DNA of 64,000 nucleotides from IMGVR_UViG_3300045921_000730:124001-188000, one strand, 5' to 3'. Positions 6,109 to 44,570 are shown, counted from the stretch's first letter. Program-made: numbers and translations. The notes: generated by a model from the letters alone, not told the origin.

Positions 6109-7893
6109 ATGTTAATTACATTCCATTCTGTTTCACTTAAAAATTTCTTATCATATGGCAATGCTCCAACAACTTTCTTATTGGAAAGACCAGGAACAAC
6201 ACTAATTGTTGGTGAAGACCTTGATAACACAACAAATGGTTACGGAACAAACGGAACAGGCAAATCAAGTATCATTAATGCAATCACATACTGTCTTTAT
6301 GATAAACCTGTTTCAAACATTTCTAAAGACAATCTTGTAAACAACGTCAACAAAAAAAATATGGAAGTTGTTGTTGAATTTACTAACAACGCTGGTGTTA
6401 AATATCTTGTTAAACGAACAAGAAAAACAAAAGCTGGTGCAGCCGGAAATGGAGTATATCTTTATGAAAATGGAAAAGATATTACTTTAGATAGTGTTGC
6501 TGCCACAAACACAAAGATTGAAGAAATTATTGGTGTTCCATATGAACTTTTTGTACGTATCGTTGTTTTTTCTGCATCACATATTCCGTTTTTAGATCTA
6601 CCCACAAAATCTCACTATTCAGCAAACCAAACGGATATTATTGAAGAACTTTTCGGTCTAACAGAACTTTCAAAAAAAGCAGCAGCACTAAAAGAAACAA
6701 TTAAAGAAACCGAAAACAAGCTAACGTCTCAAAAAACAAAACTTGAACTACTTGAAAAAGAACACATACGTCATCAACAACAAATTAATTCTGCTAAAGC
6801 CAGAGTTGACGATTGGAATGAAAAAACAGCAAAAACAATTAAAGAGTTACGTTTACAATTAAAACGTATCGAATGTGTTAATTTCGAAGAACAAAAAACG
6901 TTTCATGAAACGCTACGTGCTCTCAACGAAAAAATATCGGAAAAGCTTGATGAAAAAACAAACATTGAAAAACAAATTAAACAAACTTCACTTTCTATCA
7001 AAAAAAATCAACACGAAATATCTCATTTAAAAGATGATAGGTGTCCGTATTGTAAACAGTCATATGCTGATGCAAAACATAAAATGGTTGAATGTGAACG
7101 AAACAATGAACAACTAACCCAAATACTAGAAACTCAACTAGCAACACTTAACAACTGTGATAAAAGTCTTGAGGAACTCATAAAGCGTCAGAAAGAAATT
7201 TCTAAAAAAATAGAAGTTGATGATATTGAAGAACTCATTAGTATTAAAAATAAATCGTCACAGATTGCATCAAAAATTCATGACTTACTCAATGCAACTA
7301 ATCCGTTTATTGAACCATATCAAGAATTATTAGAGACAAAACTTGAAGAAATCAACTACGAAGAAGTAAATTCAACCACAAAACTTATAGAACATCAAAC
7401 ATTTTTGTTAAAACTTTTGACAAAAAAAGATAGTTTTGTTAGAAAAGCATTGTTAAATAAAAATATTCCGTATTTAAATTCACGCTTGCAATATTATTTA
7501 ACACTTCTCGGTCTTCATCACAAAGTTGAATTTACACATGAAATGACAGCAAAGATTTCTCAATTGGGGAAAGAATTAGATTTTGGTAACTTATCTGCAG
7601 GCCAACGCGCAAGAGTAAATCTTGCACTTTCTCTCTCATTTAGAGACGTTTTACAGAGTCTACATACGAAAATTAACATTTGTATGTTTGACGAAGTTTT
7701 AGATGTCGGTCTTGATGCAGTTGGTGTACAGGATGCAGCAAGACTATTAAAACGTATCTCAAGAGACGAAAAACTTTCATTGTTTATTATCTCTCACAGA
7801 GATGAAATTGAGGGCGTGTTTGACTCAAAACTAACAATCCAGTTAAGTAAAGGATTTTCCTACATAAAAGAAAGTCAACTACTAGACGTCTAA
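6109..7893 (+). CDS. gp46: Recombination ATPase subunit (gp46/SbcC/Rad50)
   Basis: Walker A NGTGKS, coiled coil with CPYC zinc hook, LSAGQ signature, Walker B FDEV, ISH. Confidence 0.93.
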   Translation: MLITFHSVSLKNFLSYGNAPTTFLLERPGTTLIVGEDLDNTTNGYGTNGTGKSSIINAITYCLYDKPVSNISKDNLVNNVNKKNMEVVVEFTNNAGVKYLVKRTRKTKAGAAGNGVYLYENGKDITLDSVAATNTKIEEIIGVPYELFVRIVVFSASHIPFLDLPTKSHYSANQTDIIEELFGLTELSKKAAALKETIKETENKLTSQKTKLELLEKEHIRHQQQINSAKARVDDWNEKTAKTIKELRLQLKRIECVNFEEQKTFHETLRALNEKISEKLDEKTNIEKQIKQTSLSIKKNQHEISHLKDDRCPYCKQSYADAKHKMVECERNNEQLTQILETQLATLNNCDKSLEELIKRQKEISKKIEVDDIEELISIKNKSSQIASKIHDLLNATNPFIEPYQELLETKLEEINYEEVNSTTKLIEHQTFLLKLLTKKDSFVRKALLNKNIPYLNSRLQYYLTLLGLHHKVEFTHEMTAKISQLGKELDFGNLSAGQRARVNLALSLSFRDVLQSLHTKINICMFDEVLDVGLDAVGVQDAARLLKRISRDEKLSLFIISHRDEIEGVFDSKLTIQLSKGFSYIKESQLLDV

Positions 7894-7912
7894 AGAACAT
7901 CAGGTTTCCTTG
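7874..7912 (-). repeat. IS200/IS605-right-end-like hairpin remnant (family A, copy 1)
   Basis: Minus strand reads CAAGGAAACCTGATGTTCTTTAGACGTCTAGTAGTTGAC; similar to 12487-12526 and 36006-36045. Confidence 0.55.
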
Positions 7913-7965
7913 CGGGAATTATATGAAAACGGATAAATACAATTTTATCAACGAGAGACACGACA

Positions 7966-8283
7966 ATGAAACTTAATGACATTTACGAAAACATAAAAGA
8001 TGACACCTCTGGTTTGCTCGCTATTGTAAGACCAACAATCTCAAAGCTCCTAGACGCAAAAGAAAAAAGCACCGACCAGGAAAAGTCGGTATTGTTGAGA
8101 AGAATTTCTGCTTTACTTTCCAAGGTTGTTGTAGATGTAATGAATGTTGAAAATCCAGAAGAAGTCAGGGATGTAATCAATCACATTAATGCAGAAATTA
8201 AAAATGTTGGTGTATTAAACATTCCTAACCAAAAACTTAAAGATTTCCAACGAAGACTGGAACAATCTTTTTATACCCTTTAA
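7966..8283 (+). CDS. Hypothetical protein, possible internal head protein
   Basis: 105-aa ORF after GATAAATA (7932-7939); N-terminus MKLNDIYE. Confidence 0.6.
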   Translation: MKLNDIYENIKDDTSGLLAIVRPTISKLLDAKEKSTDQEKSVLLRRISALLSKVVVDVMNVENPEEVRDVINHINAEIKNVGVLNIPNQKLKDFQRRLEQSFYTL

Positions 8284-8322
8284 AATTTTTTTACACCATT
8301 TTTAAATGGATTAAATAGTCCT

Positions 8323-8817
8323 ATGAAATATTTTATAGGGCTTGATCAATCATACAATTCTTTTGGGTGCTGCATTATTGATGAACGGTTCAATTTACTT
8401 CACTACGAAACGTTCGGCTCACCAAAAGACAAGGACATTTTTGAACGCGCGTGGCATCTTACGAGTCACGTGAAGGATATCGTTTTACGATTCCAACCAT
8501 GCTCAATATGCATCGAAGGTCTTGCATTTGGTATGCGTGGCGATGCAACAAGAGATTTAGCAGGATTACAATTTTCTGTTGTCAACATTTTAAGATTTAG
8601 TTATAATCAAAACATAAATGTTATTGCCCCTCTTTCGTTAAAAAAATTTGTAACGAAAAGTGGTAAAGCAACAAAAGAACAAATGGTTGAAGCATTGCCA
8701 GAAAATATTTTAAATAAATTTTTAGAAAAACATAAAAAAACAACTGGTTTATATGATTTATCAGACTCTTATTGGTTATCAAGATATTGTTTAGATAATT
8801 TTAAGGCAAACTGTTGA
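8323..8817 (+). CDS. ruvC: RuvC-like Holliday junction resolvase
   Basis: YFIGLDQS, CIEGLAFG, LKKFVTKSGKATKEQM, DLSDS: RuvC acidic catalytic pattern. Confidence 0.8.
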   Translation: MKYFIGLDQSYNSFGCCIIDERFNLLHYETFGSPKDKDIFERAWHLTSHVKDIVLRFQPCSICIEGLAFGMRGDATRDLAGLQFSVVNILRFSYNQNINVIAPLSLKKFVTKSGKATKEQMVEALPENILNKFLEKHKKTTGLYDLSDSYWLSRYCLDNFKANC

Positions 8818-8847
8818 AACAAAACAACACTAAAAAATAGAAACGCA

Positions 8848-9121
8848 GTTGGTAATACCCTTCTTCCAACCGAGCGACGAACATAGCCAGCAGTATGCTA
8901 CCAAGCGTCGTTAAATAAGTGCTAACTTGGGAGAAGTCATACTTATTTAAAAGAATAAAAAATCTTTTTTTTCTTTTTGGTCTTGTGGGGGAGTTGTAAT
9001 TTTTGGTTTTTCTTTTTACCAACAACAAGAACCCCGAAATAATTAATAATTACAATGTTGTTTGAAAACGAGTGAAGCGAAGTTTTCAAACAACATTCAT
9101 TAAGCACGTACGTGCTTAATG
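8848..9121. other. Non-coding cluster of five inverted repeats between convergent genes
   Basis: 10-bp stem 8911-8950, 16-bp stem 9054-9097, perfect 24-bp palindrome 9098-9121, plus shorter stems at 8848-8870 and 8874-8911. Confidence 0.7.
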
Positions 9122-9129
9122 GACCGAAT

Positions 9130-9318: not shown

Positions 9319-9366
9319 GTCCCTTACATCTTTAGGGGAGCCATGTTTCAGCGTTATGTAAAAAAA
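9309..9366 (-). promoter_or_regulatory. Programmed -1 ribosomal frameshift signal
   Basis: T TTT TTT (9366-9360), 7-nt spacer, stem GCTGAAACATG/CATGTTTCAGC (9352-9342 with 9319-9309). Confidence 0.75.
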
Positions 9367-10142: not shown

Positions 10143-10218
10143 AAAAATCTCCTTATTGCACAGATATTTATTGATGTCATAAAACCATAAATAACTCAAC
10201 ATATTGGGGAAACTGTAT

Positions 10219-12408
10219 ATGGCTGATGATGTATTAAAAAATATTAGAGAAGTAGATGCAAATCTTCAAATGTTTTCTGATACACTAAAACGTATAGTTG
10301 AAGTGAACAAAACATATGAAGACGTTCAACGTAATTTAAATGAAACCGTCGAAGAAAATGAGCGTTCAATTGACGAGATTTACAAGAAAAAAATATTAAT
10401 TGAAACTTCATATACAAAGAAAAAGTTAGAAGAAATAAAAGCTGTTGAAGGTTTGGTAAAAAGTCAAAAAGAACAATTACGACAACTTGCACTTGAGATC
10501 GCTAAGAAGCAAGAGCTGATTGAAGCAACCGATCAGAATAGCGAACAGCACAAACTTTTGGTTGAACAAATTGAAACATTACGTAATGAATACTCATCTT
10601 TGAATAATAATATTATTCAAAATCAAGGAAAAATTAACCAGAATACGACCGCTTTAGTTAAAAATCAAACCTCCCTTGGTACTTTTGCAACAAAAATTAG
10701 TGATACAGCAAAAGAAACATTTACATTTAAAGCAGGGTTGGCTGGATTGGGCGCTTCATTAAAGGCTTTAAGCAACGAACTTCGTCAAACAACTAAACAA
10801 TATGGCGGGTTTTATGAAGGGCTTAATCAAAGTACATCCAGTACTGGTCAATTTATTGATATTGTCAAACAACTTGGACAAACATATTACGATTCATATG
10901 TAAAATATGGAATAAATCCCGAAACCTTAGCACGGTTAAATCGTGAATATCGACAAATGTCGTTGGTTATTGGTGATACCAATAAAGTTCAACATCTATT
11001 GAACACCACAAACAAAGAAGGTTTAACCTTCCAGCAACAATATTTTCGTTTGACAGGTAACAACGAACAAGCGATGAGTGCTTTGTATGAGCAGCTGAAT
11101 ATGCTAGCTGTTTCAGGCATAAAACCAACGTCAGCAGCATTGCAATCGATGGCAGATACAACAACACGGGTTAGCAAAATAACCGGTATAATGCCAGACC
11201 AATTTAACGAATTGATGAATTCTATAATTGGAACCACCGAATCGATAGGACTCATGCGTGCAATGTCTGAGCAACAGCGAGTAGCTTTCTTAAAGACCAA
11301 TCAAACAATATTAGCTACAAATGTTGCTCTTGGTATGACAAAAGAACAAGCAGCACAAGCTGCAAAAACATTAAATGAAATGGCTGGACAAAAACCCCTT
11401 GATCGTATGCGGCAAGCAGCACGAATGAGAGCCATGGGAGCGGCGTTTGGTGTTGAAGGAGCTGATGTCGCAGCTCAAGCTGTTATAGCAGGTTCTCGAG
11501 CTACAGACGAGCAAAGGCAAGCGTTAGCAGCTTTTTCCAGATCTATGGCAACAACCATGGATCAAATGAGGGGTGCAGGACTTGGTGCTGAAATTGTATC
11601 AACGACAATGATGGAAAAAATGGATCTTGAAAGATATTTTGGTAAAGAAAGTCCATTTTCGACAACACTAGCAATCCCTGTTAAACAAGCTGCCGAAAAC
11701 TTAAGTACAGCTAACGCCGATTTAACAAAAGGTATGGATGCATTCGTAAAAGTAATGAATGCACTTCAATCGCCGATCGGGGCATTGACGGGTGCAATAG
11801 TAGTATTAACAGGAGCTGTGGTTGCTAACACAATGGCACAAACAGGTAAAGCTATTGGAAATATTGGAAAAGGAGTTGGAAGCGCCGTAGGAAACGCTGC
11901 CAAAGGAGCTGTCGGTCTTGCAGCTCGAGGTACCGCACTTGGATTATCAGGTATGGCAGGATATGAATTGGGTGAGTTATTTTATGGATCCGATTTTGGG
12001 TATACTGCTACTCAGAACCTAATCGATTTCTTTACTGGTGGTCCAAAAGCCGATGCTGCAACAGAAGCACGAAAAAATCAAATGATTCAAGAGATGAAAC
12101 AAAGACGTGCGGAATATGTTGCAGGAAGTAAAACACCAAGTACCATGGTAGTTGAACAAACAGAAGAAACAAACAAAAAAATTGAACAACAAAATAATAT
12201 AATCGATCAAAACTTAAATGAAATCAAACAGTCAAATTCATATCTTAAAACAATTTCTGATATGATTGCTGAGCAACTATTATTAACAAGAAAACAAATT
12301 GAATTGTCTGGATTGAGTGAAGAAGAAAGAAGAAAACAAATTAATTCAATGTTAAGAATTAATGAAATTAAAGGAAAATCAGCAAGCTATATTACACCAA
12401 TTCAGTGA
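10219..12408 (+). CDS. Tape measure protein (putative)
   Basis: About 729 aa, helical Ala/Gln-rich, Gly-rich hydrophobic stretch near the C-terminus; next to the chaperone pair; CATAAATA upstream. Confidence 0.65.
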   Translation: MADDVLKNIREVDANLQMFSDTLKRIVEVNKTYEDVQRNLNETVEENERSIDEIYKKKILIETSYTKKKLEEIKAVEGLVKSQKEQLRQLALEIAKKQELIEATDQNSEQHKLLVEQIETLRNEYSSLNNNIIQNQGKINQNTTALVKNQTSLGTFATKISDTAKETFTFKAGLAGLGASLKALSNELRQTTKQYGGFYEGLNQSTSSTGQFIDIVKQLGQTYYDSYVKYGINPETLARLNREYRQMSLVIGDTNKVQHLLNTTNKEGLTFQQQYFRLTGNNEQAMSALYEQLNMLAVSGIKPTSAALQSMADTTTRVSKITGIMPDQFNELMNSIIGTTESIGLMRAMSEQQRVAFLKTNQTILATNVALGMTKEQAAQAAKTLNEMAGQKPLDRMRQAARMRAMGAAFGVEGADVAAQAVIAGSRATDEQRQALAAFSRSMATTMDQMRGAGLGAEIVSTTMMEKMDLERYFGKESPFSTTLAIPVKQAAENLSTANADLTKGMDAFVKVMNALQSPIGALTGAIVVLTGAVVANTMAQTGKAIGNIGKGVGSAVGNAAKGAVGLAARGTALGLSGMAGYELGELFYGSDFGYTATQNLIDFFTGGPKADAATEARKNQMIQEMKQRRAEYVAGSKTPSTMVVEQTEETNKKIEQQNNIIDQNLNEIKQSNSYLKTISDMIAEQLLLTRKQIELSGLSEEERRKQINSMLRINEIKGKSASYITPIQ

Positions 12409-12426
12409 ATGACTGCCTCGCAATAG

Positions 12427-12654
12427 TTCTACCCCGTAAAATTAAAGACTTTGTGGTCTCTCCAGACTAAACAACAATAAATAATTCAAGAAACCTTGAT
12501 GTTCTTCAGATGTTAGGATAAATTAAATAAATAAAAAAATCAATTAATAATAACCGTGTTAATTGATTTTAATTAAAACTAAATATTGTAATAATCTGTT
12601 GTAACAAATTCGGCCCAGAAAATTAGTTGTTCTTAAGAACAACTAGCAGTTCAC
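12427..12654. repeat. Cluster of IS200/IS605-end-like remnants (families C, A, B) upstream of the portal gene
   Basis: 12427-12475 resembles 44464-44520; 12487-12526 resembles 36006-36045; 12612-12654 GGCCCAGAAAATTAGTTGTTCTTAAGAACAACTAGCAGTTCAC resembles 36070-36110. Confidence 0.55.
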
Positions 12655-14364: not shown

Positions 14365-14739
14365 ATGAACAAAGCAATGAAACAAAATCTCGAAAATTTA
14401 ATTACAGGTCTCATCAACGAAGATACTGAAGGATCAACACAAGCTATTCGTGAATATCTTCGAATGAAGTCTCAGGAAATTCTTCTCGGCGAAAAGAAAG
14501 AAGACGATGAAGATCATGATGAAGATATGGACATGGATGACGAAGACGAAGATCATGACAAAGATCATGATGATGATGATGACGATGATGATGATGACGA
14601 TGATGATGACGATGATGATGACGATGATGATGACGATGATGATGACGATGATGATGACGATGATGATGACGATGATGATGACGATGATGATGACGACGAA
14701 GAAAAAAACAAAAAACACAAAAAACATAAAGACGAATAA
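14365..14739 (+). CDS. Acidic prohead core-like protein (gp67/gp68 position) with a 43-residue poly-Asp tract
   Basis: AAGGAG SD, late promoter, located between portal and protease. Confidence 0.7.
   Translation: MNKAMKQNLENLITGLINEDTEGSTQAIREYLRMKSQEILLGEKKEDDEDHDEDMDMDDEDEDHDKDHDDDDDDDDDDDDDDDDDDDDDDDDDDDDDDDDDDDDDDDDDDDEEKNKKHKKHKDE
14569..14697 (+). repeat. GAY trinucleotide tract, mostly (GATGATGATGAC)n, encoding poly-Asp
   Basis: 129 nt of GAT/GAC codons with 12-nt periodicity. Confidence 0.95.
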
Positions 14740-21688: not shown

Positions 21689-23476
21689 ATGGCTGCTAAA
21701 AAATCTCACGATCAGTTTTTGATGGATTTACAAAAACGAAACAAATTAAATCCAGACAATCAAATTGAATTAATTTCAGGTCAACAATATACAGGTTTAG
21801 ACGAACCGTTGACATTTAAATGTCTTAATGGACACAGAAACTTTACAACGTTGCCTAGATATATTATCCAAAAACAATCAGGATGCCCCATATGTGGTGC
21901 AAAAAGAGCAGGTAATAAAAACATAAAAACAAACGAATCGTTTATTGATAAGTTAAATAAACGAAATATGATATATTCACCTGTAATGTTAGCACCTAGC
22001 GAACAATACAAAGGTGTGCATACAAAAATAGCATTTGTTTGTGGGAATCCTAAACATTCGTCGTGGTTAGCTACACCAGCTTCTATATTGCAAGGACACG
22101 GATGTCCTGAGTGCGGGAAAGAAAAAAGCAGACAAACTCACCAACACAACCATTCACAGTTTGTTGAATTGTTATTAAAAAGAAATGTAGAACATCCACA
22201 TAAAAAAGTATATCTAGCAGATGGTGAAATATATACCCAGCAAAACAGTAAGCTGAAATTTGCATGTGATAAAGGACACATTTGGTCAACTCTACCAGGA
22301 GATGTCATTCACAGAAAAATTGGTTGTCCCTTTTGTGCATCTTCAAAAACATTTTCGTTCATGGCTATAGAATGGCTTACACAGATTGAACGGAATGAAA
22401 ACATTACAATTATCCATCGTGGAAATTCAGATAAAGAATATGTGTTACCAGGTACCAAATATACTGTGGACGGATATTGTAAAGAAAACAACACCGTATA
22501 TGAATTTTATGGTAATTATTGGCACGGAAATCCTCGAATATACAAAAAAGAAGACATTAATGAGCGCGCCAAGATGACATTTGGTGAACTATATGACAAT
22601 ACAATTAAAAAGGAAAATGCAATTAAAGAAATGGGTTATAATCTAATAACAATATGGGAGGATGAATTTGATAACATCAAACAACAACAAACTCAAATTG
22701 ATAAGTTGAAAGAAATAACAAAAAACCTTTCGGTTGACGTTGTTGTTATGCCCATTGATAGACCATATGACCGGTTGTACTATGTTAATCAATTAAATAC
22801 TGCTATACACAATAATAAGCCAACCATTTTTATATTCAACGATGAGTTAAATAACATAGAACTTATTAGTAGTAAATTAAAACATTATAATAAAAGTAAT
22901 AATGCTACACGTATACACGCACGACAATGCGATATAGTTGAAATAACCAATAAACACAAAAAAGATTTTCTTGACAAGTATCATGTACAAGGTAATCATA
23001 ATGCTGAGATAGCATATGGTGCCTACTACAATGATAATCTTGTAGCTGTAATGACTTTTTGTAAGCCACGAATCGCATTAGGACAAAAAAACAAACAAAA
23101 CAATGAACAACGTTGGGAATTAAGTCGTTTTTGTACTGATGTTAATTATCGAATACCAGGAATTGCTTCAAAGTTATTAACATATTTTAAACGCAATTAT
23201 CATTGGGATGAAATTTATAGTTATGCAGACAGACGGTGGAGTGTTGGAAATTTATATGAAACTCTTGGATTTACGTTGGATAGAATAAATCCACCTGATT
23301 ATTTTTATGTTGTTAACGGAGTACGTAAACACAGATGGAATTACCGTAAAGACATTTTAAAAACAACACTACCAAATTATAATCCTAATTTGACAGAATA
23401 CCAAAATATGGTTAATCATGGATTCTGGCGTGTGTGGGATTGTGGGACCTTGCGTTATTCTTTAAAGAACATTTAA
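21689..23476 (+). CDS. Homing-endonuclease-like protein: three Zn-ribbon repeats + PD-(D/E)xK + Mom/GNAT-like domain (copy 3)
   Basis: Three C..H...GCPxC repeats; YTVDGYCKENNTVYEFYGNYWHG; C-terminal domain very similar to copy 2. Confidence 0.75.
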   Translation: MAAKKSHDQFLMDLQKRNKLNPDNQIELISGQQYTGLDEPLTFKCLNGHRNFTTLPRYIIQKQSGCPICGAKRAGNKNIKTNESFIDKLNKRNMIYSPVMLAPSEQYKGVHTKIAFVCGNPKHSSWLATPASILQGHGCPECGKEKSRQTHQHNHSQFVELLLKRNVEHPHKKVYLADGEIYTQQNSKLKFACDKGHIWSTLPGDVIHRKIGCPFCASSKTFSFMAIEWLTQIERNENITIIHRGNSDKEYVLPGTKYTVDGYCKENNTVYEFYGNYWHGNPRIYKKEDINERAKMTFGELYDNTIKKENAIKEMGYNLITIWEDEFDNIKQQQTQIDKLKEITKNLSVDVVVMPIDRPYDRLYYVNQLNTAIHNNKPTIFIFNDELNNIELISSKLKHYNKSNNATRIHARQCDIVEITNKHKKDFLDKYHVQGNHNAEIAYGAYYNDNLVAVMTFCKPRIALGQKNKQNNEQRWELSRFCTDVNYRIPGIASKLLTYFKRNYHWDEIYSYADRRWSVGNLYETLGFTLDRINPPDYFYVVNGVRKHRWNYRKDILKTTLPNYNPNLTEYQNMVNHGFWRVWDCGTLRYSLKNI

Positions 23477-23501
23477 ACACCAGGTTTTCTTCAATTGTTT
23501 G

Positions 23502-23509
23502 TATAAATA
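23502..23509 (+). promoter_or_regulatory. T4-type late promoter
   Basis: TATAAATA. Confidence 0.7.
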
Positions 23510-29497: not shown

Positions 29498-29593
29498 GTA
29501 AGATACAATAAACTTCACGATTTTCTCGACTAATTTTCGATAAATAAACAAGTCTGGTTGTGGAACATAGTACAATAAACAAGAGAATAAAAC

Positions 29594-35989: not shown

Positions 35990-36005
35990 TTGTACATTAA
36001 AAATT

Positions 36006-36110
36006 CAAGGAAATCTGATACTCTTTAGACGTCAGGATCAATTGAATAAATACAAAAGTAGGGAACACAGCCCAGGAAGTTAGTTGTTTTTACGACAACT
36101 AACAGTTCAC
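36006..36110 (+). repeat. Paired IS200/IS605-end-like remnants (A then B) flanking a late promoter
   Basis: CAAGGAAATCTGATACTCTTTAGACGTCAGG...AATAAATA...GCCCAGGAAGTTAGTTGTTTTTACGACAACTAACAGTTCAC; same order as upstream of the portal gene. Confidence 0.55.
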
Positions 36111-38055: not shown

Positions 38056-38508
38056 ATGGATATTATTAAAAAACAAAAAACAATCGAGCATCCTTTAGAA
38101 GAAGTGTTTGATATTGAAAATAATTCTACTGTGGTCGAATATTCGGAAACGTTGCCAACGCCACCGGTTGATGCACCTATATATGACGAAAAAGACAACG
38201 AAATAGATTTACAGTTTGAAGAAGTTTATGTTTCTGCCATGAATAAAGTAATAGGAATTAGTGATGAAATTGAGCGCGTCGAAGGAAAATATAAAGCACG
38301 TTTAGGTGAAGTAACAGCAACAATGCTTACCGTCGCTCTAAATGCTGCAAAAGAAAAAAGAGAACTTAAACAACATAAAGATAAACTTTTATTACAAAAA
38401 CAAGTTTCAGGACCATCAACAGTAAATAATAATTTAGTTATAACTGATAGAAATGAAATTTTAAAGTTGTTACAAGAAGGAAAAAATTTAAAGAGCGATA
38501 AATTATGA
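38056..38508 (+). CDS. Terminase small subunit (putative)
   Basis: Helical core with C-terminal TVNNNLVITDRNEILK; upstream of the large terminase. Confidence 0.7.
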   Translation: MDIIKKQKTIEHPLEEVFDIENNSTVVEYSETLPTPPVDAPIYDEKDNEIDLQFEEVYVSAMNKVIGISDEIERVEGKYKARLGEVTATMLTVALNAAKEKRELKQHKDKLLLQKQVSGPSTVNNNLVITDRNEILKLLQEGKNLKSDKL

Positions 38509-39215
38509 CCAGGTTTATACAATTTTTATATGAACAAATGCAAGGACGTGTAGCGCGCGGTGTTACAGGACAACAACAAGTAATTGACTACTTGCAAAGT
38601 CAAGGCTACACGATTGATCAAAAAAATATAGCTATAGCACACAGTCAAAGACCTGACATTATTTTACACATTAAAGAATTTTCTGAACCTATACAAATAG
38701 AAGTAAAAACAAGAGATAGGCCCCAAAGACATATTCAAACTATAGAAATGGCTGTTCTTGGTGATAAATCTAATCCAGAGTTGGACAAACTTGTTCAGGT
38801 GATAACTAACGGAAAGTTTAATTCTTTTAAACAAGCGATAAAGTTTTACAGAAAAAAATATATTAATTATAATGAAACAAGCCAAAAACCAAAAACGTTG
38901 CCTGGTTATCCGGGAAACGAAGGAACTGCAAAAAGTGGTACTATACCATCAGAATTGAATTCTTCTGATCCTCAGGCACTTTCGTATATAAGAGAATTGT
39001 ATGTTACTAATTTAAAACATTTTGGAAATAATTATTTTGCTTTGATAACAGGCGAAAATGACGTAAAAATATATTTTACCGGTCTTGGAAAAAACTTTTT
39101 AAAAGCGCCTGCGTTTCCAATGCCTAAACACGTAAAAATAGATTCATATGGCAGTGCTGATAAATTACTTGGCGGATATAAATTTAGAGTAGGACCTAAA
39201 ATTATGTTACCGTGA
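38505..39215 (+). CDS. PD-(D/E)xK nuclease-like protein
   Basis: RPDIILH...IQIEVKT; ATGA overlap with the small terminase. Confidence 0.5.
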   Translation: MTRFIQFLYEQMQGRVARGVTGQQQVIDYLQSQGYTIDQKNIAIAHSQRPDIILHIKEFSEPIQIEVKTRDRPQRHIQTIEMAVLGDKSNPELDKLVQVITNGKFNSFKQAIKFYRKKYINYNETSQKPKTLPGYPGNEGTAKSGTIPSELNSSDPQALSYIRELYVTNLKHFGNNYFALITGENDVKIYFTGLGKNFLKAPAFPMPKHVKIDSYGSADKLLGGYKFRVGPKIMLP

Positions 39216-39252
39216 ACTGTCGCCTAACATAAATGAAGTAGCTTCCTGGGCC
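39212..39252 (-). repeat. IS200/IS605-end-like remnant (family B, copy 3)
   Basis: Minus strand reads GGCCCAGGAAGCTACTTCATTTATGTTAGGCGACAGTTCAC; overlaps the TGA of the upstream ORF. Confidence 0.55.
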
Positions 39253-39328
39253 AGATCTATAAACGAAATCATATCTTCGCAGCCATTATTTTGAACAATC
39301 TCTGTGATATACAGAAAACAATAAAGCC

Positions 39329-40258
39329 ATGGCAAAATCAAAAAATCCTTATCTTAAAAAAGCCAACGAACAACACGAGTACACAAATCAGCAAGTTTTA
39401 GAATTAATGAAATGTGCTGACGATCCTATTCATTTTATTACTAATTATGTTGTTATTGAACATCCTGTAAAAGGTGCCATTAAGTTTGATATGTACCCAT
39501 ATCAAAAACGAATAATTAGAGCATTTAAAGATAACAGACAAGTAATTGTTTTGTCAGCAAGACAAACAGGTAAAAGTATTTCATCAGCAGCTTATTTGCT
39601 TTGGTTTGCTTGTTTTCATTTTGATAAAACTATTCTTATAGCATCAAACAAAAACGACAATGCTATGGAAATGATTCACAGAATTCGTTTTATGTATGAA
39701 AGACTGCCTCATTGGTTAAAACCAGGTATCACCGAAGACGGATGGAATAAACATAGTGTGGGGTTTGATAATGGTTCGAGAATAATTTCGCAAGCAACCT
39801 CTGAAACAACAGGTCGTGGTATGTCAATATCTCTATTGTTTTTAGATGAGTTCGCTTTTGTTAGAGAAACAATTCAAGAAGAATTTTGGACTTCGGTTGC
39901 ACCAACTTTAGCAACAGGTGGTAGTTGTATTATCACATCAACACCGAATGGTGATACAAACAGATTTGCTCAACTCTGGAGAGGTGCGTGCGTAAAAGCA
40001 AACGATAACGGATTTGTTCCCATTGAAGTAAAATGGAATGAACCACCGGGACGAGACGAAAAATTTAAACAAAAAGAGATGGCAAAGATAGGTGAAACCC
40101 GATGGAAACAAGAATACGAATGTTGCTCCATAAATACAAAAGTAGAGATAATGGATGAGAATAATAATATACTTTGTTTAACTATTGGAGAACTTTATAA
40201 TGTTTTATCAACAAATAGCGAGAGATCTGACACAAAAATATGTAACATCTCCAATTGA
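39329..40258 (+). CDS. gp17: Terminase large subunit, N-terminal ATPase extein + split-intein N fragment
   Basis: ARQTGKS Walker A, LLFLDEFAF Walker B, TSTPNG; ends QEYE|CCSINTKV...TIGELY. Confidence 0.92.
   Translation: MAKSKNPYLKKANEQHEYTNQQVLELMKCADDPIHFITNYVVIEHPVKGAIKFDMYPYQKRIIRAFKDNRQVIVLSARQTGKSISSAAYLLWFACFHFDKTILIASNKNDNAMEMIHRIRFMYERLPHWLKPGITEDGWNKHSVGFDNGSRIISQATSETTGRGMSISLLFLDEFAFVRETIQEEFWTSVAPTLATGGSCIITSTPNGDTNRFAQLWRGACVKANDNGFVPIEVKWNEPPGRDEKFKQKEMAKIGETRWKQEYECCSINTKVEIMDENNNILCLTIGELYNVLSTNSERSDTKICNISN
40121..40258 (+). mobile_element. Split intein N fragment (45 aa)
   Basis: Block A CCSINTKVEI followed by TIGELY, then stop. Confidence 0.85.
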
Positions 40259-41717
40259 CGGGAAACAATATTGTCGTAAAAATGGAGAATTTTTACGACA
40301 CATACGACAACACGAATTTGATAACTATCAATCTTTTTTTGAACACTATTATCCTTCACTAATACAATACTGTCCGGTGTGTAACAAAAAATGTACTTTT
40401 TTACCCTCAAAAATGACATATCGCAAAACTTGTGGGTCAAAAAGTTGTGCAAATCAAATATCTTCAAACGTAAAACAAGGATTCACAGAAGAACAGAAAC
40501 AAATTCGAACTGAACGATACCGACAATCAATGTCATTAAAGACAAAGAAACAAATAGAGGAAATATCCACTAAGCGAAAAAGCACATATGTTTTAAAATA
40601 TGGTGTTGATCATCCTTGGAAATCTTCGCAGGTAAGAGAAAAAATTCAACTCACAATGGAAAAAAAGTATGGACACAGGAACTTCAGTTCAACTCTGATT
40701 CCTCCTGAGAGTAAAATACTTTTGGAAAATCGTGAGTGGCTTTACACCAAACACGTATTAGAACAAACTCCGCTATATGTAATTGCCAAACAACTGAACG
40801 TTGGAGATAGAACTGTAGGTGTTTACCTACATAACCACAACATCAAAACACACAATTTTCAATCTGCACAATGGGAAAAAGAATTAGAAGATTTCTTAAA
40901 AGAACATAATGTTCAATTTCAACGAAACGCAAGAGATATCATTCCTCCAAAAGAATTAGATTTTTATATTCCAAAATTTAATTTGGCAATCGAGTTGTGT
41001 GGTTTATATTGGCATAGCGATGCGAAAGAAAGAATCACCAAACATTATCATGAACACAAATACAAAGAATGCCAACAACAAAATATTAGATTATTAACAA
41101 TATTTGAAGACGAGTGGGAAAGAAAACATGTTATTTTTTCTAAAATTAAACATTTGATACGTGCAACAACAAGCAAGTGTTATGCTCGGAATTTGCAAGT
41201 TGTCAGTGATATTTCTAAGACTGAAAGAAATAATTTTTTTGAAAAAACACATATACAGGGAGATGGTAAGGGTAGTATTTGTATAGGATTACGAAATGCC
41301 AACCAGGTACTTGTTGCACTAGGATTATTTTCAAAACAATCCAACCAAAAAGATACTTATGTTCTTGAAAGATATTCTACCTGTGAACACGTCGTTGGTG
41401 GATTCAGCAAAATCATTTCTGCGTTTGAAAAACTTACAAATTGCAAAAAAATAATAACATTTGCTGACAAACGTTGGAGTAACGGTGAACTATATTTAAA
41501 AACAAATTTTTATAAAGATAAAGACCTTCCAATAGATTATGCATACGTAGTAAATAATAAACGAATACATAAATTTAATTTCAGACACAAACATCTAAAG
41601 AAACGTTTGAACAACTACGATCCGTCACTATCCGAATCACAAAATTGTAATTTGCATGGAATATATAGGATATGGGACTGTGGGAAAATTCGATTTGTTC
41701 GTGAGAGGAAATTATGA
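40200..41717 (+). CDS. Homing-endonuclease-like protein between the intein halves: Zn finger/HTH + PD-(D/E)xK + Mom/GNAT-like domain (copy 5)
   Basis: GGAG SD before ATG 40200; CPVC...TCGSKSC; ELDFYIPKFNLAIELCGLYWHSD; FADKRWSNG; RIWDCG. Confidence 0.8.
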   Translation: MFYQQIARDLTQKYVTSPIDGKQYCRKNGEFLRHIRQHEFDNYQSFFEHYYPSLIQYCPVCNKKCTFLPSKMTYRKTCGSKSCANQISSNVKQGFTEEQKQIRTERYRQSMSLKTKKQIEEISTKRKSTYVLKYGVDHPWKSSQVREKIQLTMEKKYGHRNFSSTLIPPESKILLENREWLYTKHVLEQTPLYVIAKQLNVGDRTVGVYLHNHNIKTHNFQSAQWEKELEDFLKEHNVQFQRNARDIIPPKELDFYIPKFNLAIELCGLYWHSDAKERITKHYHEHKYKECQQQNIRLLTIFEDEWERKHVIFSKIKHLIRATTSKCYARNLQVVSDISKTERNNFFEKTHIQGDGKGSICIGLRNANQVLVALGLFSKQSNQKDTYVLERYSTCEHVVGGFSKIISAFEKLTNCKKIITFADKRWSNGELYLKTNFYKDKDLPIDYAYVVNNKRIHKFNFRHKHLKKRLNNYDPSLSESQNCNLHGIYRIWDCGKIRFVRERKL

Positions 41718-42046
41718 CAGAACTTTTGGCAAAGAACACAAAAAACTGGAAAATACGAACGAATGTTGGTTTTGTTCCTTTTGTTGGGGTTGCTCACATG
41801 GGAAGAAAACCAATATACAAAATAACATTTGAAGATAGTACATTTATAGATGTAACTGATACCCATACCTTTTTTACATTAGATGGACGTGAAATTACAA
41901 CGAGGGAACTTTCGCCAGGTATAACATTAATGGGCATCGAAAATAAAACAATATCTTCAGTAGAGCCTGCTGGTGAAGAAGAAACTTTTGATATCGTTGA
42001 AAGTGAAACACATACATTTTTTGCTAATGGTTTATTGTGTCATAAT
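41714..42046 (+). mobile_element. Split intein C fragment (111 aa)
   Basis: Block B VTDTHTF (TxxH), block F ETFDI...HTFFANG, block G CHN followed by Cys+1. Confidence 0.88.
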
Positions 42047-42793
42047 TGCGAATTTTTATCAAGCGATCCATTACTAATTGATACGCTTGTTCTTGCTAAT
42101 TTAACAAACAGCGTCAAAGATCAACAACCAGTAGCAATTATGGGAGATATTTTATTTTTTAAACAACCACAAAAAAATTCAATATATCTTGTAGGGATGG
42201 ATCCGGCAACAGGCAGAGGACATGATTATACGACAATTACGGCTTTTGAATTTCCGTCGATGGAGCAAGTGGCACAATTCAGATCGAATACAACATCTAC
42301 AGTCGATGCGTATCAAAATTTGAAACGCCTATTAAAAGTCTTTGAAAAAACACAATCTACTGTTTATTATTCAGTTGAAAACAATGGTGTCGGTGAAGGA
42401 ATTATTGCTTTGTTACAAAACGATGAATCACCACCAGAGACAGCTGAATTTGTATCTCAATCCAACAGACAAAAAGAAGGTATGGTAACAACAAAACAAG
42501 CAAAAATGAAAGCTTGTTTAACGTTAAAAGAAATGATAGAAAGAGATAAAATAAAAATTAAATCACCTTTAATAATTCAAGAACTAAAAAACTATGTAAG
42601 AAAAGGCGGTTCATATGCTGGTAAAATAGGATCTACTGACGATTTAGTTTCATCTTTGTTAATTGTAGTAAGACTTTTAGAAGAAATATCTTCATTTGAA
42701 CAAGAAGCTTATGATAAATTATATTCTTCTTCGTATTTTAACGTCAATGATGAATTTGATGAAAACGACATACCGCCAGCAATAGTATTTTAA
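41714..42793 (+). CDS. gp17: Split-intein C fragment + terminase large subunit C-terminal nuclease extein
   Basis: ...FANGLLCHN|CEFLSS; RNase H-like YLVGMDPATG..DYT, VENN, DDLV. Confidence 0.92.
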   Translation: MTELLAKNTKNWKIRTNVGFVPFVGVAHMGRKPIYKITFEDSTFIDVTDTHTFFTLDGREITTRELSPGITLMGIENKTISSVEPAGEEETFDIVESETHTFFANGLLCHNCEFLSSDPLLIDTLVLANLTNSVKDQQPVAIMGDILFFKQPQKNSIYLVGMDPATGRGHDYTTITAFEFPSMEQVAQFRSNTTSTVDAYQNLKRLLKVFEKTQSTVYYSVENNGVGEGIIALLQNDESPPETAEFVSQSNRQKEGMVTTKQAKMKACLTLKEMIERDKIKIKSPLIIQELKNYVRKGGSYAGKIGSTDDLVSSLLIVVRLLEEISSFEQEAYDKLYSSSYFNVNDEFDENDIPPAIVF

Positions 42794-42824
42794 AGTAAAT
42801 ACTACACGAAAGGAATTATATAGT

Positions 42825-43322
42825 ATGAAATTATTTGAACTTACTCAAAAACCAACAGTTTATTTTCCAATTGGACCTTCAGGAACAGGTAAATCAACAG
42901 TATATAAAAAGTTAAAAGAAAAAAATCCGAATCTTAATATTTTTTCTTTAGATATTCTTCGTCATAAATTTTATGATAAAAATGATTATGCCAAGGCTTG
43001 GAAAATGTCAACAGAGGATAAAGATTTTTCAAAAAAAGCAAATGATGAATTTTTCAAAATTTTGAAGCAAAAACAAGATTTATACATTGACAACACAAAC
43101 TTAACTCCAAAATCAAGAAAGTTTTATTTAGAACAAGCAAAAAAGCACGGATATATGGCAACGGCAATTGTCTTTGATATCGATTTAGACACAATTATTA
43201 AACGACAGACAACAAGAACGGACAAATCTGTTCCTGAAGAGGCTGTAAGAAGGCAATACCAATCAATGATCTTGCCACAAGAAAAAGAATTTGACAAAAT
43301 AATTAACGCAAATGAATTATAA
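42825..43322 (+). CDS. P-loop kinase (AAA_33 / polynucleotide-kinase-like)
   Basis: GPSGTGKST, SLDILR, YIDNTN, R..R.DKSVPEEAV. Confidence 0.8.
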   Translation: MKLFELTQKPTVYFPIGPSGTGKSTVYKKLKEKNPNLNIFSLDILRHKFYDKNDYAKAWKMSTEDKDFSKKANDEFFKILKQKQDLYIDNTNLTPKSRKFYLEQAKKHGYMATAIVFDIDLDTIIKRQTTRTDKSVPEEAVRRQYQSMILPQEKEFDKIINANEL

Positions 43323-43848
43323 ACAAATAACTGGAAAACAATTAATACAAGGACTTGAAGAGTCTTCGTATAATGATTTAGAACAAAACATCATTAATAA
43401 CTTTGTAACAAATAGACGACAAAATGCTGTTAATGAAGTCGTTGTAAACAATATTACTTATACTCCATTTGAAAATAGTGGTATTCTTCAAGTTGATGCA
43501 TCTGTAAGAAGTAATCAACATAACTACAAAGTTACATTACAATTTCAAAATGTTGTGTTTGGTGAAGGGCCAACATCAATTACTATAACATCAACAGACG
43601 GTGAAACAAATAATTTACAACCAATTTCAATTCAAACTAATGACATAAAAGTTAAGTGTAATTGTTTAGATTTTTTTTGGCGTTTTGCATATTGGAATGC
43701 AAACGATAAAAGTTTAGTTGGAGAACCGCCAGCTTTATATAAGAGAAGAACTAATAGACCACCAGTAAACGCTGCCAGAGTTCCTGGCATTTGTCGTCAT
43801 ATTATTAAAGTTGTCGATGAATTAACTAAGCAAGGTATTGTTAAATAG
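43312..43848 (+). CDS. SWIM zinc-finger-like protein
   Basis: VKCNCLDF...GICRHI. Confidence 0.65.
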   Translation: MNYKQITGKQLIQGLEESSYNDLEQNIINNFVTNRRQNAVNEVVVNNITYTPFENSGILQVDASVRSNQHNYKVTLQFQNVVFGEGPTSITITSTDGETNNLQPISIQTNDIKVKCNCLDFFWRFAYWNANDKSLVGEPPALYKRRTNRPPVNAARVPGICRHIIKVVDELTKQGIVK

Positions 43849-44437
43849 ATTTGATAATTTTTTCGAGTGTTTTTTTGATTTTTTGTTCTTTTGTTTGTTT
43901 CAAAGAAGAAAGATTATCAAAATTATTTACTATTGATTTTGAAAGCTCTGTATTAATCGGTTCGATATTAAATGTTGGTGTTGTTTGTATTTTTTCAATT
44001 TCTTTGATAAGATCTTTAATATCTTTTTTGGTTTTTTTGTTTGTTGTTTGGTTTTCTTGTTTTTCTGTAAGAATTTTGTTTTTTGATTTTAAGATTTTAC
44101 CTTCAGTTTTAGTAGGAGAAACGTTGGAAACGTTTTGAGTTGTAACTTGAGGTAGATTTTCATCGAAAGAAATATTTCCTTGAGCAGGTTTAAAATAATA
44201 ATGACCAACGATTACTTCAATCATATATGTAGCATTGTCTGGTAGACTTACTTCAGGAACTTTAACTTCCCATAGTTTATCTTGTTTGTGAGTAGCAAAA
44301 AAACTAACGCTCGTTTGTTCATTAAGCGAAACAGTAAATTTAACTTGTGGCTCTTCGCTGTCAATACCACCTTCAATGTCCAAATCAAAATTTACTATAG
44401 TTTCATTATTTTTTGCTAATTTAATTGTTTCATTCAT
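43841..44437 (-). CDS. Hypothetical late protein
   Basis: AAGGA SD; GATAAATA on the minus strand at 44459-44466; beta-rich N-terminal half. Confidence 0.65.
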   Translation of the reverse strand: MNETIKLAKNNETIVNFDLDIEGGIDSEEPQVKFTVSLNEQTSVSFFATHKQDKLWEVKVPEVSLPDNATYMIEVIVGHYYFKPAQGNISFDENLPQVTTQNVSNVSPTKTEGKILKSKNKILTEKQENQTTNKKTKKDIKDLIKEIEKIQTTPTFNIEPINTELSKSIVNNFDNLSSLKQTKEQKIKKTLEKIIKSI

Positions 44438-44463
44438 AATCAAAATCCTTTATCGCTCTATTT

Positions 44464-44570
44464 ATCAACTACCACGAAACTAAAGATTTTGTGGTTTTCG
44501 ATCTCATAGACTCAGCCAACATCATCGGTACTTTCTTCGGTTTTTGTTTGGTGCTTGACTGCGCTCCACA
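44464..44570 (-). repeat. Longest IS200/IS605 right-end/omegaRNA-like remnant (family C)
   Basis: Minus strand: TGTGGAGCGCAGTCAAGCACC...GAAAACCACAAAATCTTTAGTTTCGTGGTAGTTGAT. Confidence 0.5.

What the first reader, a model, noticed from the sequence alone, without database searches (positions are those of the whole stretch)
7874..44570. At least eight IS200/IS605-right-end-like hairpin remnants at gene ends and leaders
Seen: three related motif families of the form GAA-stem-loop-stem-(C/T)AGTT(C/G)A: A at 7874-7912(-), 12487-12526(+), 36006-36045(+); B at 12612-12654(+), 36070-36110(+), 39212-39252(-); C at 12427-12475(-), 44464-44570(-). Copy A1 encodes the last codons of gp46 (SQLLDV*), B3 supplies the stop of ORF 38505, and C1 runs into a GATAAATA promoter. 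Known: IS200/IS605 right ends are a subterminal hairpin plus a short terminal motif and form the 3' part of TnpB omegaRNA. Inference: scars of repeated transposition, surviving only where essential genes are spared, possibly reused as RNA structures.
Basis: partly seen in the sequence, partly recalled or inferred. Interest (0 to 1): 0.6.

Follow-up and report, generated by a model that had tools for sequence, protein, structure and literature searches.

The report
TnpB transposon ends littering a jumbo phage
The repeated hairpins are the left and right ends of IS200/IS605-type (TnpB) transposons and of their gene-less miniature copies, which have spread through this hot-spring jumbo phage and still differ between near-identical strains; this is a known kind of element in an unusually crowded viral setting.

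Summary
Seven of the eight copies are statistically solid; C1 is weak. All share the form GAA(A)-stem-TCTTTAG loop-stem.

- **Left ends** (family A) finish in ATGAAT.
- **Right ends** (families B and C) finish in AGTT[C/G]A[T/C].
- **Covariation:** the stems covary strongly.

The same 244-kb phage record holds seven intact tnpB genes. Their 3' ends carry the B or C hairpin, and family A lies upstream of them. The record has 53 such hairpins, most in gene-less miniature elements.

In the window:
- A2+B1, A3+B2 and C2 are each one complete miniature element.
- B3 is a decayed right-end fragment.
- A1 is a 49-nt single-hairpin element.

A 98-99% identical phage lacks A1 exactly. There is no target duplication, and the insertion lies 3' of TTCAT. 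Public runs from two studies show the same empty joint. About 80 related phage loci lack the motif at the same gene junctions.

No Y1 TnpA is found in the record. All seven tnpB genes sit behind T4-type late-promoter motifs, which the miniatures keep.

Verdict: a new member of a known kind, of moderate interest.

The parts
7874..7922 (-). A1: a 49-nt single-hairpin element. It joins the left-end 5' part and the right-end tail TAGTAGTTGAC of the tnpB element at genome 50.0-51.4 kb. Its reverse complement encodes the last 6 codons and the stop of the gp46-like ORF 6109-7893.
   Evidence: Covariance model 47.9 bits. blastn gives 97.7% over 43 nt to that element's left end and 96% over 28 nt to its right end. 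It is absent from the 98-99% identical contig L009, where the ORF ends ...YIKENENE*. The joint 7873>7925 is seen in runs X5, X7 and X8.
7923..7927 (-). Target-adjacent motif TTCAT, immediately 5' of A1. It reads TTCGT in the empty allele.
   Evidence: The same TTCAT flanks the left ends at genome 50.0, 73.3 and 122.2 kb.
12477..12654 (+). One 178-nt miniature element made of A2 and B1. It has a left hairpin (12481-12533), an internal AATAAATA (12526-12533) and a right hairpin ending CAGTTCAC at 12654, 21 nt before the portal ATG (12675).
   Evidence: Covariance model 33.5 and 43.6 bits. blastn to the ends of the element at genome 61.7-63.0 kb begins at that element's first base. The right-end profile gives E 1.3e-10. 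It is also present in L009.
12427..12475 (-). C1: a possible decayed right-end hairpin of the C type, just after the stop of ORF 10204-12408.
   Evidence: Not found by the covariance model or nhmmer. A local alignment to C2 scores 32 against a background of 12.8 +/- 2.6. Weak.
35998..36110 (+). One 113-nt miniature element made of A3 and B2. It has a left hairpin, an internal AATAAATA (36045-36052) and a right hairpin ending CAGTTCAC at 36110, 21 nt before the ATG of ORF 36132. It is preceded by TACAT (35993-35997).
   Evidence: Covariance model 37.6 and 38.4 bits. The right-end profile gives E 1.3e-11. Relatives at 71-81% protein identity (four clear cases) have an ordinary terminator plus NATAAATA at this junction and no such hairpin.
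39212..39292 (-). B3: an 81-nt right-end fragment that includes the remnant of a tnpB 3' end. Its hairpin has decayed. The terminal GTTCAC supplies the TGA stop (39213-39215) of ORF 38505-39215 on the + strand.
   Evidence: nhmmer E 2.6e-4 over profile positions 77-160. The covariance model gives only 12.1 bits.
44464..44631 (-). C2: one 168-nt degenerate miniature element of the type belonging to the tnpB gene at genome 231.8-233.0 kb. It has a decayed left hairpin (44585-44637 by the covariance model), an internal CATAAATA, about 125 nt of guide-RNA scaffold and a right hairpin ending GTTGAT. TTCAT lies at 44632-44636. The junction GAT|AAATA forms GATAAATA (44459-44466), 15 nt before the ATG of ORF 43841-44443.
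   Evidence: nhmmer E 2.5e-24. Covariance model 49.3 and 28.4 bits. The alignment with 12 sister copies is. Four of 11 pairs of the first scaffold stem are broken in this copy.
23476..23508 (-). An additional decayed left-end remnant at the stop of ORF 21689-23476.
   Evidence: blastn 88% over 33 nt to the left end of the element at genome 61.7 kb, E 4e-5. Weak.
29538..29582 (+). GATAAATA followed by GTCTGGTTGTGGAAC, the first 15 nt of the scaffold of the 215-nt miniature family. It lies upstream of ORF 29594. It may be a fragment or a shared leader.
   Evidence: nhmmer E 0.0046. Weak.

Best explanation
**What it is (shown).** The motifs are the subterminal hairpins and terminal motifs of IS200/IS605-family, tnpB-type insertion sequences that have colonised this T4-like jumbo phage.
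- A left end reads TT[T/C]AT | about 20 nt - GAAA - stem - TCTTTAG - stem' - ATGAAT.
- A right end reads GAA(A) - stem - TCTTTAG - stem' - (N)AGTT[C/G]A[T/C] |.
- Seven divergent tnpB genes (31-72% amino-acid identity to each other) share this end architecture.
- At least 25 gene-less derivatives share it too. They fall into three forms:
  - About 215-nt elements that keep a late-promoter motif and the whole scaffold of the guide RNA (omegaRNA).
  - 113-230-nt elements of a second lineage.
  - 49-57-nt single-hairpin forms.

**In the window.** A2+B1, A3+B2 and C2 are three complete miniature elements sitting just upstream of late genes in the sense orientation. B3 is a right-end fragment, A1 is a recent single-hairpin insertion, and C1 may be a decayed right end.

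**How it works (inferred from the known biology of the family).**
- A Y1 TnpA, supplied in trans, would fold the top strand into these hairpins.
- It would then cut after the TT[T/C]AT motif and after the right-end motif, and paste the single strand 3' of another TT[T/C]AT without any duplication.
- TnpB would be transcribed late in infection from the NATAAATA motif inside each left end.
- TnpB would load guide RNAs that end in the right hairpin and continue into the flanking DNA.
- These guides would let TnpB cut empty alleles, so the element is restored or copied by recombination, for example into co-infecting genomes.
For: **Link to tnpB.**
- Seven intact tnpB genes, plus a 12-residue remnant of an eighth, are present. 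All seven have the full Pfam architecture.
- The D-E-D and zinc-finger motifs are visible in the translations.
- One copy matches the solved ISDra2 TnpB structures at E 5e-69.
- In five of the seven genes the stop codon lies in the right hairpin.
- The miniature at genome 99.5 kb is an internal-deletion copy of the full element at 61.7-63.0 kb.

**Copy number and structure.**
- Thirteen copies of the scaffold and right-end module were aligned: twelve gene-less miniatures (nine of them 79-97% identical to the tnpB 231.8 kb module; window copy C2 76%) plus the full element, all with sharp common boundaries.
- The genome holds 53 covariance-model hits at E<0.01.
- The stems covary strongly.

**Mobility.**
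- A1 has an empty site in L009: a net 49-nt insertion with no duplication. The same joint appears in three runs from two studies.
- A reciprocal case exists. A roughly 200-nt miniature is present in the relative contig L343 and absent from this genome at position 122366.
- The motif is absent from 1.06 Mb of related structural loci, except for L082.

**Wider distribution.**
- The right-end motif alone retrieves at least 117 IMG/VR stretches. In 47 places among 118 loci held, a TnpB homologue ends 17-153 nt upstream of it.
- A cultured Parabacteroides phage tnpB carries the same right end.

**Promoter and target motif.**
- All seven tnpB genes have NATAAATA ending 5-31 nt before the start codon, where 0.13 would be expected by chance.
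- The motif is 9-14 times enriched upstream of genes in this genome.
- TTTAT and TTCAT are the experimentally shown target-adjacent motifs of Geobacillus ISGst2 TnpB2 and ISGst5 IscB. Gene-less PATE-like elements with shared ends, and PATEs that often encode guide RNAs, are also described there (PMC10055086).
Against: - No Y1 TnpA was found in the 244-kb record, nor in five other viral records that carry the motif. The agent of mobility is therefore not identified. The record is only about 72% complete.
- No RNA data exist. Transcription, guide-RNA processing and TnpB activity are all inferred.
- Rfam has no matching family. There are only sub-threshold RAGATH-18 hits near two tnpB 3' ends.
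- The window's miniatures A2+B1 and A3+B2 keep only about 50-58 nt of the right-end side. C2's first scaffold stem is broken. These copies are probably not working guide-RNA genes.
- A single-hairpin element such as A1 does not fit the canonical model, in which TnpA binds two hairpins.
- C1 and B3 fail the hairpin model.
Confidence: 0.88

Rival explanations
1. Domesticated modules. The window's miniature elements are no longer mobile. They now serve as the late promoter and the structured 5' leader of the portal gene, of ORF 36132 (a paralogue of the tail-tube protein) and of ORF 43841-44443. This is compatible with an IS origin; it is a rival only about present function.
For: - Right ends lie 20-21 nt before the ATGs of these genes, in the sense orientation. 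The same placement (11-35 nt) is seen at about 10 other sites.
- The only NATAAATA between the upstream stop and each of these ATGs lies inside the element or at its junction.
- Relatives have a terminator plus NATAAATA about 25 nt before the ATG at the junction orthologous to ORF 36132, and no element.
- The target motif is degenerate at A2 (CAACA) and at A3 (TACAT), so these copies look fixed in place.
- They are conserved in the 99% identical strain.
Against: - There are no transcript data.
- The spacing from promoter motif to ATG (79 and 141 nt) is unusual for T4-type late genes.
- Sense orientation could simply be what survives selection in a densely packed genome.
- Conservation across 1% divergence says little.
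Confidence: 0.3
2. Native phage regulatory hairpins unrelated to transposons. Examples would be terminator/promoter cassettes, RNA-stability elements, or operator sites for a phage RNA-binding protein.
For: The sites are intergenic and next to late-promoter motifs. The loop is conserved while the stems vary, as expected for a protein-recognised RNA hairpin.
Against: - The same sequences form the ends of seven tnpB genes.
- They are absent from orthologous junctions of 83 related loci.
- Insertion and empty-site pairs exist.
- A1 and B3 are antisense to the local genes.
- No T-run follows the hairpins.
Confidence: 0.03
3. REP-like elements mobilised by a RAYT-type transposase rather than by classical IS200/IS605. 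This would fit the single-hairpin 49-57-nt forms such as A1.
For: - Single-hairpin units occur several times: A1; genome 195301, 195639 and 210564; and two identical copies in L082.
- A GTAG lies at the foot of many right-end stems.
Against: - No Y1 or RAYT gene is present (PF01797 search).
- The single-hairpin forms are chimeras of the left and right ends of tnpB elements.
- The paired-end elements are the majority.
Confidence: 0.04
4. Chance similarity of AT-rich palindromes.
For: The genome is 64% A+T, and short hairpins are common in it.
Against: Covariance-model E-values run from 1e-5 to 1e-9. There are 12 exact-loop hairpins against 0.8 in shuffles. nhmmer E-values reach 1e-78.
Confidence: 0.005

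Closest known systems
IS200/IS605-family tnpB-only elements with shared ends and PATE-like miniatures in Geobacillus stearothermophilus (ISGst1-5; Meers et al., PMC10055086)
   Same: - Many tnpB lineages share similar left and right ends.
- The target-adjacent motifs are TTTAT and TTCAT.
- There are about 50 elements lacking tnpA, presumed to be mobilised in trans.
- Gene-less miniatures exist that still encode guide RNAs and would need TnpB in trans.
   Different: - Here the host genome is a virulent-type T4-like jumbo phage, not a bacterial chromosome.
- No tnpA was found at all.
- The tnpB genes and miniatures sit behind T4-type late-promoter motifs.
- Single-hairpin forms of 49-57 nt occur.
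- I could not compare the hairpin sequences with those of ISGst.
ISCaje1-4, IS200/IS605 elements (mostly tnpB-only) in the T4-like Campylobacter phages CP220 and CPt10 (Timms et al. 2010, PMC2853527)
   Same: tnpB-only IS200/IS605 elements occur in T4-like myoviruses, at different places in closely related genomes.
   Different: - Five IS elements in the two genomes there, against seven tnpB genes and 53 end hairpins here.
- No miniature family was described there.
- The ends were not compared.
ISDra2 TnpB and its omegaRNA (solved structures 8H1J, 8EXA)
   Same: The TnpB at genome 231.8 kb aligns over its full length at E 5e-69. The guide-RNA gene overlaps the 3' end of tnpB and the right end.
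   Different: - The ISDra2 target motif is TTGAT (from memory).
- No RNA evidence exists here.
- Rfam gave no match to the window sites.
PATEs (palindrome-associated transposable elements) of haloarchaea
   Same: They are gene-less miniatures bounded by the hairpin ends of IS1341-type tnpB elements. This is recalled from memory; the paper was listed but not read.
   Different: They are archaeal chromosomal elements. Nothing was tested here.
PeSL promoter/stem-loop cassettes of T4-type phages (Arbiol et al. 2010; recalled from memory, not tested)
   Same: Repeated intergenic promoter-plus-hairpin units in T4-like genomes.
   Different: - Those pair an early promoter with a stem-loop and are not tied to tnpB.
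- Here the units are bounded by IS ends, carry late-type motifs and have empty sites.

Membership tests
IS200/IS605 family | Subterminal imperfect palindromes (hairpins) at both ends, with no terminal inverted repeats | tested here: met
   The left and right hairpins share a loop and have covarying stems. The ends differ in their tails: ATGAAT on the left and AGTTCA[T/C] on the right.
IS200/IS605 family | Insertion without target-site duplication, 3' of a conserved tetra- or pentanucleotide | tested here: met
   Two occupied/empty pairs show this. A1 is a net 49-nt insertion after TTCAT. A roughly 200-nt miniature lies after TTTAT in L343. TT[T/C]AT flanks the left ends of the aligned copies.
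IS200/IS605 family | Y1 (HUH) transposase TnpA that acts on the hairpins | tested here: inconclusive
   A PF01797 search of the whole record found nothing at E<=1. Five other records carrying the motif gave none above the cut-off. The record is about 72% complete, and most family members lack tnpA (PMC10055086).
IS200/IS605 family | Accessory tnpB gene (HTH, RuvC and Zn-ribbon) whose 3' end overlaps the right end | tested here: met
   Across IMG/VR, 47 TnpB homologues end 17-153 nt before the motif.
TnpB omegaRNA | A structured RNA from the tnpB 3' end and right end, running into the flank as a guide | not testable with these tools
   No RNA runs are available. The predicted consensus fold of 13 copies has 32 pairs, 4 of them with compensatory changes. 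Rfam gave no match above threshold.
Miniature (PATE/MITE-like) derivatives of IS200/IS605 | No ORF, and both ends the same as those of a full-length element in the same genome | tested here: met
   Shown for the miniature at genome 99.5 kb, for A2+B1, for A3+B2 and for the 215-nt family including C2.
IS607 family | Serine-recombinase TnpA next to tnpB | tested here: not met
   Only a 99-residue ORF that looks, by eye and untested, like a serine-recombinase C-terminus lies upstream of one tnpB (genome 48.5-49.7 kb). That copy lacks the TCTTTAG right hairpin. This does not bear on the window sites.
REP/RAYT | A RAYT gene, with REP hairpins that carry a 5' GTAG | tested here: not met
   No PF01797 match. 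The hairpins are the ends of tnpB elements.

The most novel reading that the evidence does not exclude
The seven late-expressed TnpB nucleases and the guide-RNA-only miniature elements may form an RNA-guided homing drive inside a lytic jumbo phage population. During co-infection they would cut genomes that lack a given insertion and convert them by recombination. In both polymorphic sites found, the empty allele differs from the occupied one by one base in the 5-nt target-adjacent motif (TTCGT against TTCAT; TTCAT against TTTAT). These empty alleles could therefore be drive-resistant. Older copies next to the portal and tail genes would have been kept as promoter and leader modules.
Probability: 0.25. 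Interest if true: 0.75.

Novelty: new member of a known kind. Interest (0 to 1): 0.5.

Why it matters
It shows a virulent-type jumbo phage carrying a dense and recently active population of TnpB transposons and guide-RNA-only miniatures, wired to the phage's own late promoters.

Practical points:
- **Annotation.** These hairpins are not terminators or operators. Two ORF ends in the window are made by them.
- **A model.** The work yields a covariance model for a right-end and guide-RNA terminal hairpin that is common in viral metagenomes and missing from Rfam.
- **A natural test system.** Two co-occurring strains carry reciprocal insertions. They could be used to ask whether TnpB acts as a homing nuclease between phage genomes.

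Tried and rejected
- **Rfam.** A scan of the window at E<=10 found nothing at any site. A scan of the tnpB loci found only sub-threshold RAGATH-18 hits (34.8 and 31.1 bits, against a threshold of 44.9), plus a tmRNA and tRNAs.
- **Cultured phages.** A megablast of the portal region against cultured phages found no match.
- **Bacterial relatives.** The nearest TnpB homologues in bacterial genomes are at most 45-57% identical. Their flanks lack the hairpin, apart from one marginal hit. Neither a host nor a donor IS was identified.
- **Three cultured-phage tnpB loci.** Geobacillus E3, Gifsy-1 and Bacillus SPG24 do not carry this hairpin.
- **Idea: right ends generally rebuild a late promoter at their junction.** Rejected as a general rule. 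Only C2, and loosely the copy at genome 59530, show it.
- **Idea: the right-end tail GGTAGTTCA reflects tRNA 5' halves or insertion into tRNA genes.** Noted but not pursued. Aragorn finds only four tRNAs, none at the window sites.
- **Search for further contigs with the left end of the 215-nt miniature.** Only the relative contig was found.
- **Read laying.** Only assembled contigs were available, so there is no information on depth or on excised circles.

Full report
**Setting**

The window is bases 124001-188000 of a 244,293-bp IMG/VR virus record. The record is 35.6% G+C and CheckV estimates it at 72% complete.

Gene content marks it as a T4-like jumbo myovirus. It has a gp46-like SbcC, a portal, tail-tube proteins and a split large terminase. 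The nearest cultured portal is that of Xanthomonas phage XacN1, at 52% identity.

Public runs holding this DNA come from hot-spring and microbial-mat metagenomes.

**Observation**

A genome-wide scan showed that they belong to one architecture: GAA(A), a 5-9 bp stem, the loop TCTTTAG, the complementary stem, and then one of two tails.
- (N)AGTT[C/G]A[T/C] follows families B and C.

This architecture is far above chance:
- Twelve hairpins have the exact loop and a stem of at least 4 bp, against 0.8 in Markov shuffles.
- In an alignment of 32 copies (A1), 91% of stem cells pair and all 8 pairs show double changes.
- The covariation score is 0.775, against 0.27 when shuffled and about 0.1 when the partners are slid.

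A covariance model built from that alignment finds 53 hairpins in the genome at E<0.01.

| Window copy | Covariance model, filters off | Other support |
|---|---|---|
| C2 | 49.3 bits | nhmmer E 2.5e-24 |
| A1 | 47.9 bits | empty site in a relative |
| B1 | 43.6 bits | right-end profile E 1.3e-10 |
| B2 | 38.4 bits | right-end profile E 1.3e-11 |
| A3 | 37.6 bits | |
| A2 | 33.5 bits | |
| New hairpin 44585-44637(-) | 28.4 bits | |
| B3 | 12.1 bits (E 3.3) | 80 nt match a right-end profile at E 2.6e-4 |
| C1 | not found | local alignment to C2: score 32 against 12.8 +/- 2.6 |

**What they are**

A Pfam search of the whole record found seven intact tnpB genes of 393-422 residues, plus a 12-residue remnant of an eighth.
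- All seven have HTH_OrfB_IS605, OrfB_IS605 and the Zn-ribbon/TNB domain.
- All seven show the GIDLG, E[ND]L and HDRD motifs.
- One copy matches the solved ISDra2 TnpB structures at E 5e-69.
- In five of the seven, the stop codon is the TAG inside the B- or C-type hairpin.
- Family A lies upstream of the gene.

So A is the left end, B is the right end of the lineage at genome 61.7-63.0 kb, and C is the right end of the lineage at 231.8-233.0 kb.

The copy at genome 99.5 kb is an internal-deletion derivative of the 61.7-kb element. It keeps the left end and the last 161 nt.

The 231.8-kb lineage has left at least twelve gene-less copies of about 215 nt. Their right-end halves are mostly 80-97% identical to the corresponding part of the tnpB 231.8 kb element, with sharp common boundaries.

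The seven TnpB proteins are only 31-72% identical to each other. Several lineages therefore share one end type, as would be expected if one TnpA mobilises them all.

**Anatomy in the window**

- **A2+B1, 12477-12654(+).** This is one 178-nt element. Similarity to the full element begins at that element's first base and ends at CAGTTCAC, 21 nt before the portal ATG.
- **A3+B2, 35998-36110(+).** This is one 113-nt element, ending 21 nt before the ATG of ORF 36132.
- **C2, 44464-44631(-).** This is one 168-nt element with four parts:
  - a decayed left hairpin;
  - an internal CATAAATA;
  - about 125 nt of scaffold, in which 4 of 11 pairs of the first stem are broken;
  - a right end whose GAT joins the flank to give GATAAATA, 15 nt before the ATG of ORF 43841-44443.
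- **B3, 39212-39292(-).** This is a right-end fragment. Its terminal GTTCAC, read on the other strand, gives the TGA stop of ORF 38505-39215.
- **A1, 7874-7922(-).** This is a 49-nt single hairpin that joins the left-end 5' part and the right-end tail of the lineage at genome 50.0-51.4 kb.

**Mobility**

L009, a contig from another metagenome, is 98-99% identical to genome 130578-138852 but lacks A1 exactly.
- In element orientation L009 reads ...CGTTTTCGT|TTTCTTTT...
- This genome reads ...CGTTTTCAT|49 nt|TTTCTTTT... with no duplication.
- The gp46-like ORF ends YIKENENE* in L009 and YIKESQLLDV* here.
- The same joint (7873>7925) is present in contigs of three runs from two studies.

The reciprocal case also exists. 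The relative's contig L343 carries a roughly 200-nt miniature after AAATTTAT, at a place where this genome reads AAATTCAT|CTGCGCC.

In both pairs the 5-nt motif next to the left end differs by one base between the occupied and the empty allele. With only two cases and about 1-1.5% background divergence, this is suggestive only.

Related phages with 41-81% identical structural proteins lack the motif:
- 83 loci totalling 1.06 Mb gave hits only in L082. That locus has two identical 50-nt single-hairpin copies after TTTAT.
- At the junction orthologous to A3+B2, four relatives (71-81% tail-tube identity) have an ordinary terminator plus NATAAATA.

**Distribution**

The right-end pattern alone retrieved at least 117 IMG/VR stretches, with varied stems that are mostly perfectly complementary.
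- At 47 places among 118 loci held, a TnpB homologue ends 17-153 nt upstream of the motif.
- The tnpB of the cultured Parabacteroides phage PF672P2 has the motif too.
- TnpB homologues occur in 427 cultured phage records.
- IS200/IS605 elements, mostly tnpB-only, are already described in the T4-like Campylobacter phages CP220 and CPt10 (PMC2853527).

**Mechanism: shown and inferred**

Shown here:
- the end architecture;
- the link to tnpB;
- insertion without duplication, 3' of TT[T/C]AT;
- recent polymorphism between strains;
- a NATAAATA motif ending 5-31 nt before every tnpB start, where 0.13 would be expected by chance;
- 9-14-fold enrichment of the same motif upstream of genes in this genome;
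- retention of that motif inside the miniature elements.

Inferred from established IS200/IS605 biology (PMC10055086):
- peel-and-paste transposition by a Y1 TnpA supplied in trans;
- guide RNAs ending in the right hairpin and running into the flank;
- TnpB cleavage of empty alleles, followed by recombinational repair.

TTTAT and TTCAT are the experimentally determined target-adjacent motifs of ISGst2 TnpB2 and ISGst5 IscB in that work.

Not shown:
- any TnpA;
- any RNA.

**Present function of the window copies**

Right ends lie 11-35 nt before a same-strand start codon at about a dozen sites. For the portal gene, ORF 36132 and ORF 43841, the only late-promoter motif lies in the element or at its junction.

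These old copies, which are partly immobilised (the target motif is degenerate at A2 and A3), may now provide the promoter and a structured leader. I give this 0.3. It needs transcript mapping.

**Novelty**

This is a known kind of element: IS200/IS605 and TnpB with PATE-like miniatures. The setting and density are not commonly described, and the reciprocal polymorphisms make the homing idea testable. I rate it a new member of a known kind, with interest 0.5.

Noticed in passing
window 39329-42793: The large terminase gene is split. The pieces are an N-terminal ATPase ORF (39329-40258), an intervening 510-residue DUF7487 ORF (40185-41717), and a C-terminal ORF with a weak intein-splicing trace plus the Terminase_6C nuclease (41714-42793). 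It looks like an intein or another intervening mobile element.
   Followed up: partly
G000 genome 63118-63441 (outside the window; L004:1945-2268): A phage-encoded tmRNA (Rfam beta_tmRNA, 107.7 bits; permuted tmRNA, 121.3 bits). It lies between a tnpB right end and a miniature element.
   Followed up: no
G000 genome 122366-122371 (window -1634) and L343:11449-11649: A second polymorphic site. The 98.5% identical relative carries a roughly 200-nt miniature element here and this genome is empty. The adjacent motif is TTTAT in the occupied allele and TTCAT in the empty one.
   Followed up: yes
window 29538-29582: GATAAATA followed by GTCTGGTTGTGGAAC lies upstream of ORF 29594. This is the same late-promoter motif and first 15 scaffold bases as in the 215-nt miniature family. 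It follows three strong terminator-like hairpins.
   Followed up: partly
window 23476-23508 (-): A decayed left-end remnant overlaps the stop of ORF 21689-23476.
   Followed up: partly
whole genome: TT[T/C]ATAAATA, the target motif fused to the late-promoter core, occurs 0 times. T[T/C]ATAAATA occurs 18 times. About 5-6 occurrences would be expected, so the target motif may be avoided at promoters.
   Followed up: no
window 14365-14739: An ORF made largely of a GAT/GAC (Asp-rich) 12-nt tandem repeat.
   Followed up: no
window 47500-64000: Several families of diverged direct repeats lie inside the very long ORFs 47259-64000. They look like the repeated domains of tail-fibre-like proteins.
   Followed up: no
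G000 genome 49723-50022 (L091:9923-10222, -): A 99-residue ORF lies directly upstream of one tnpB; by eye, untested, it resembles a serine-recombinase C-terminus. It suggests a decayed IS607-type element among the IS605-type ones.
   Followed up: partly
G000 genome 235041-235100 (L100, after the tnpB at 233859-235040): The right end there is followed by a sequence that resembles the T-arm and acceptor 3' half of a tRNA. tRNA-Ala lies about 320 nt upstream of the same element. The element may have inserted into a tRNA gene.
   Followed up: no
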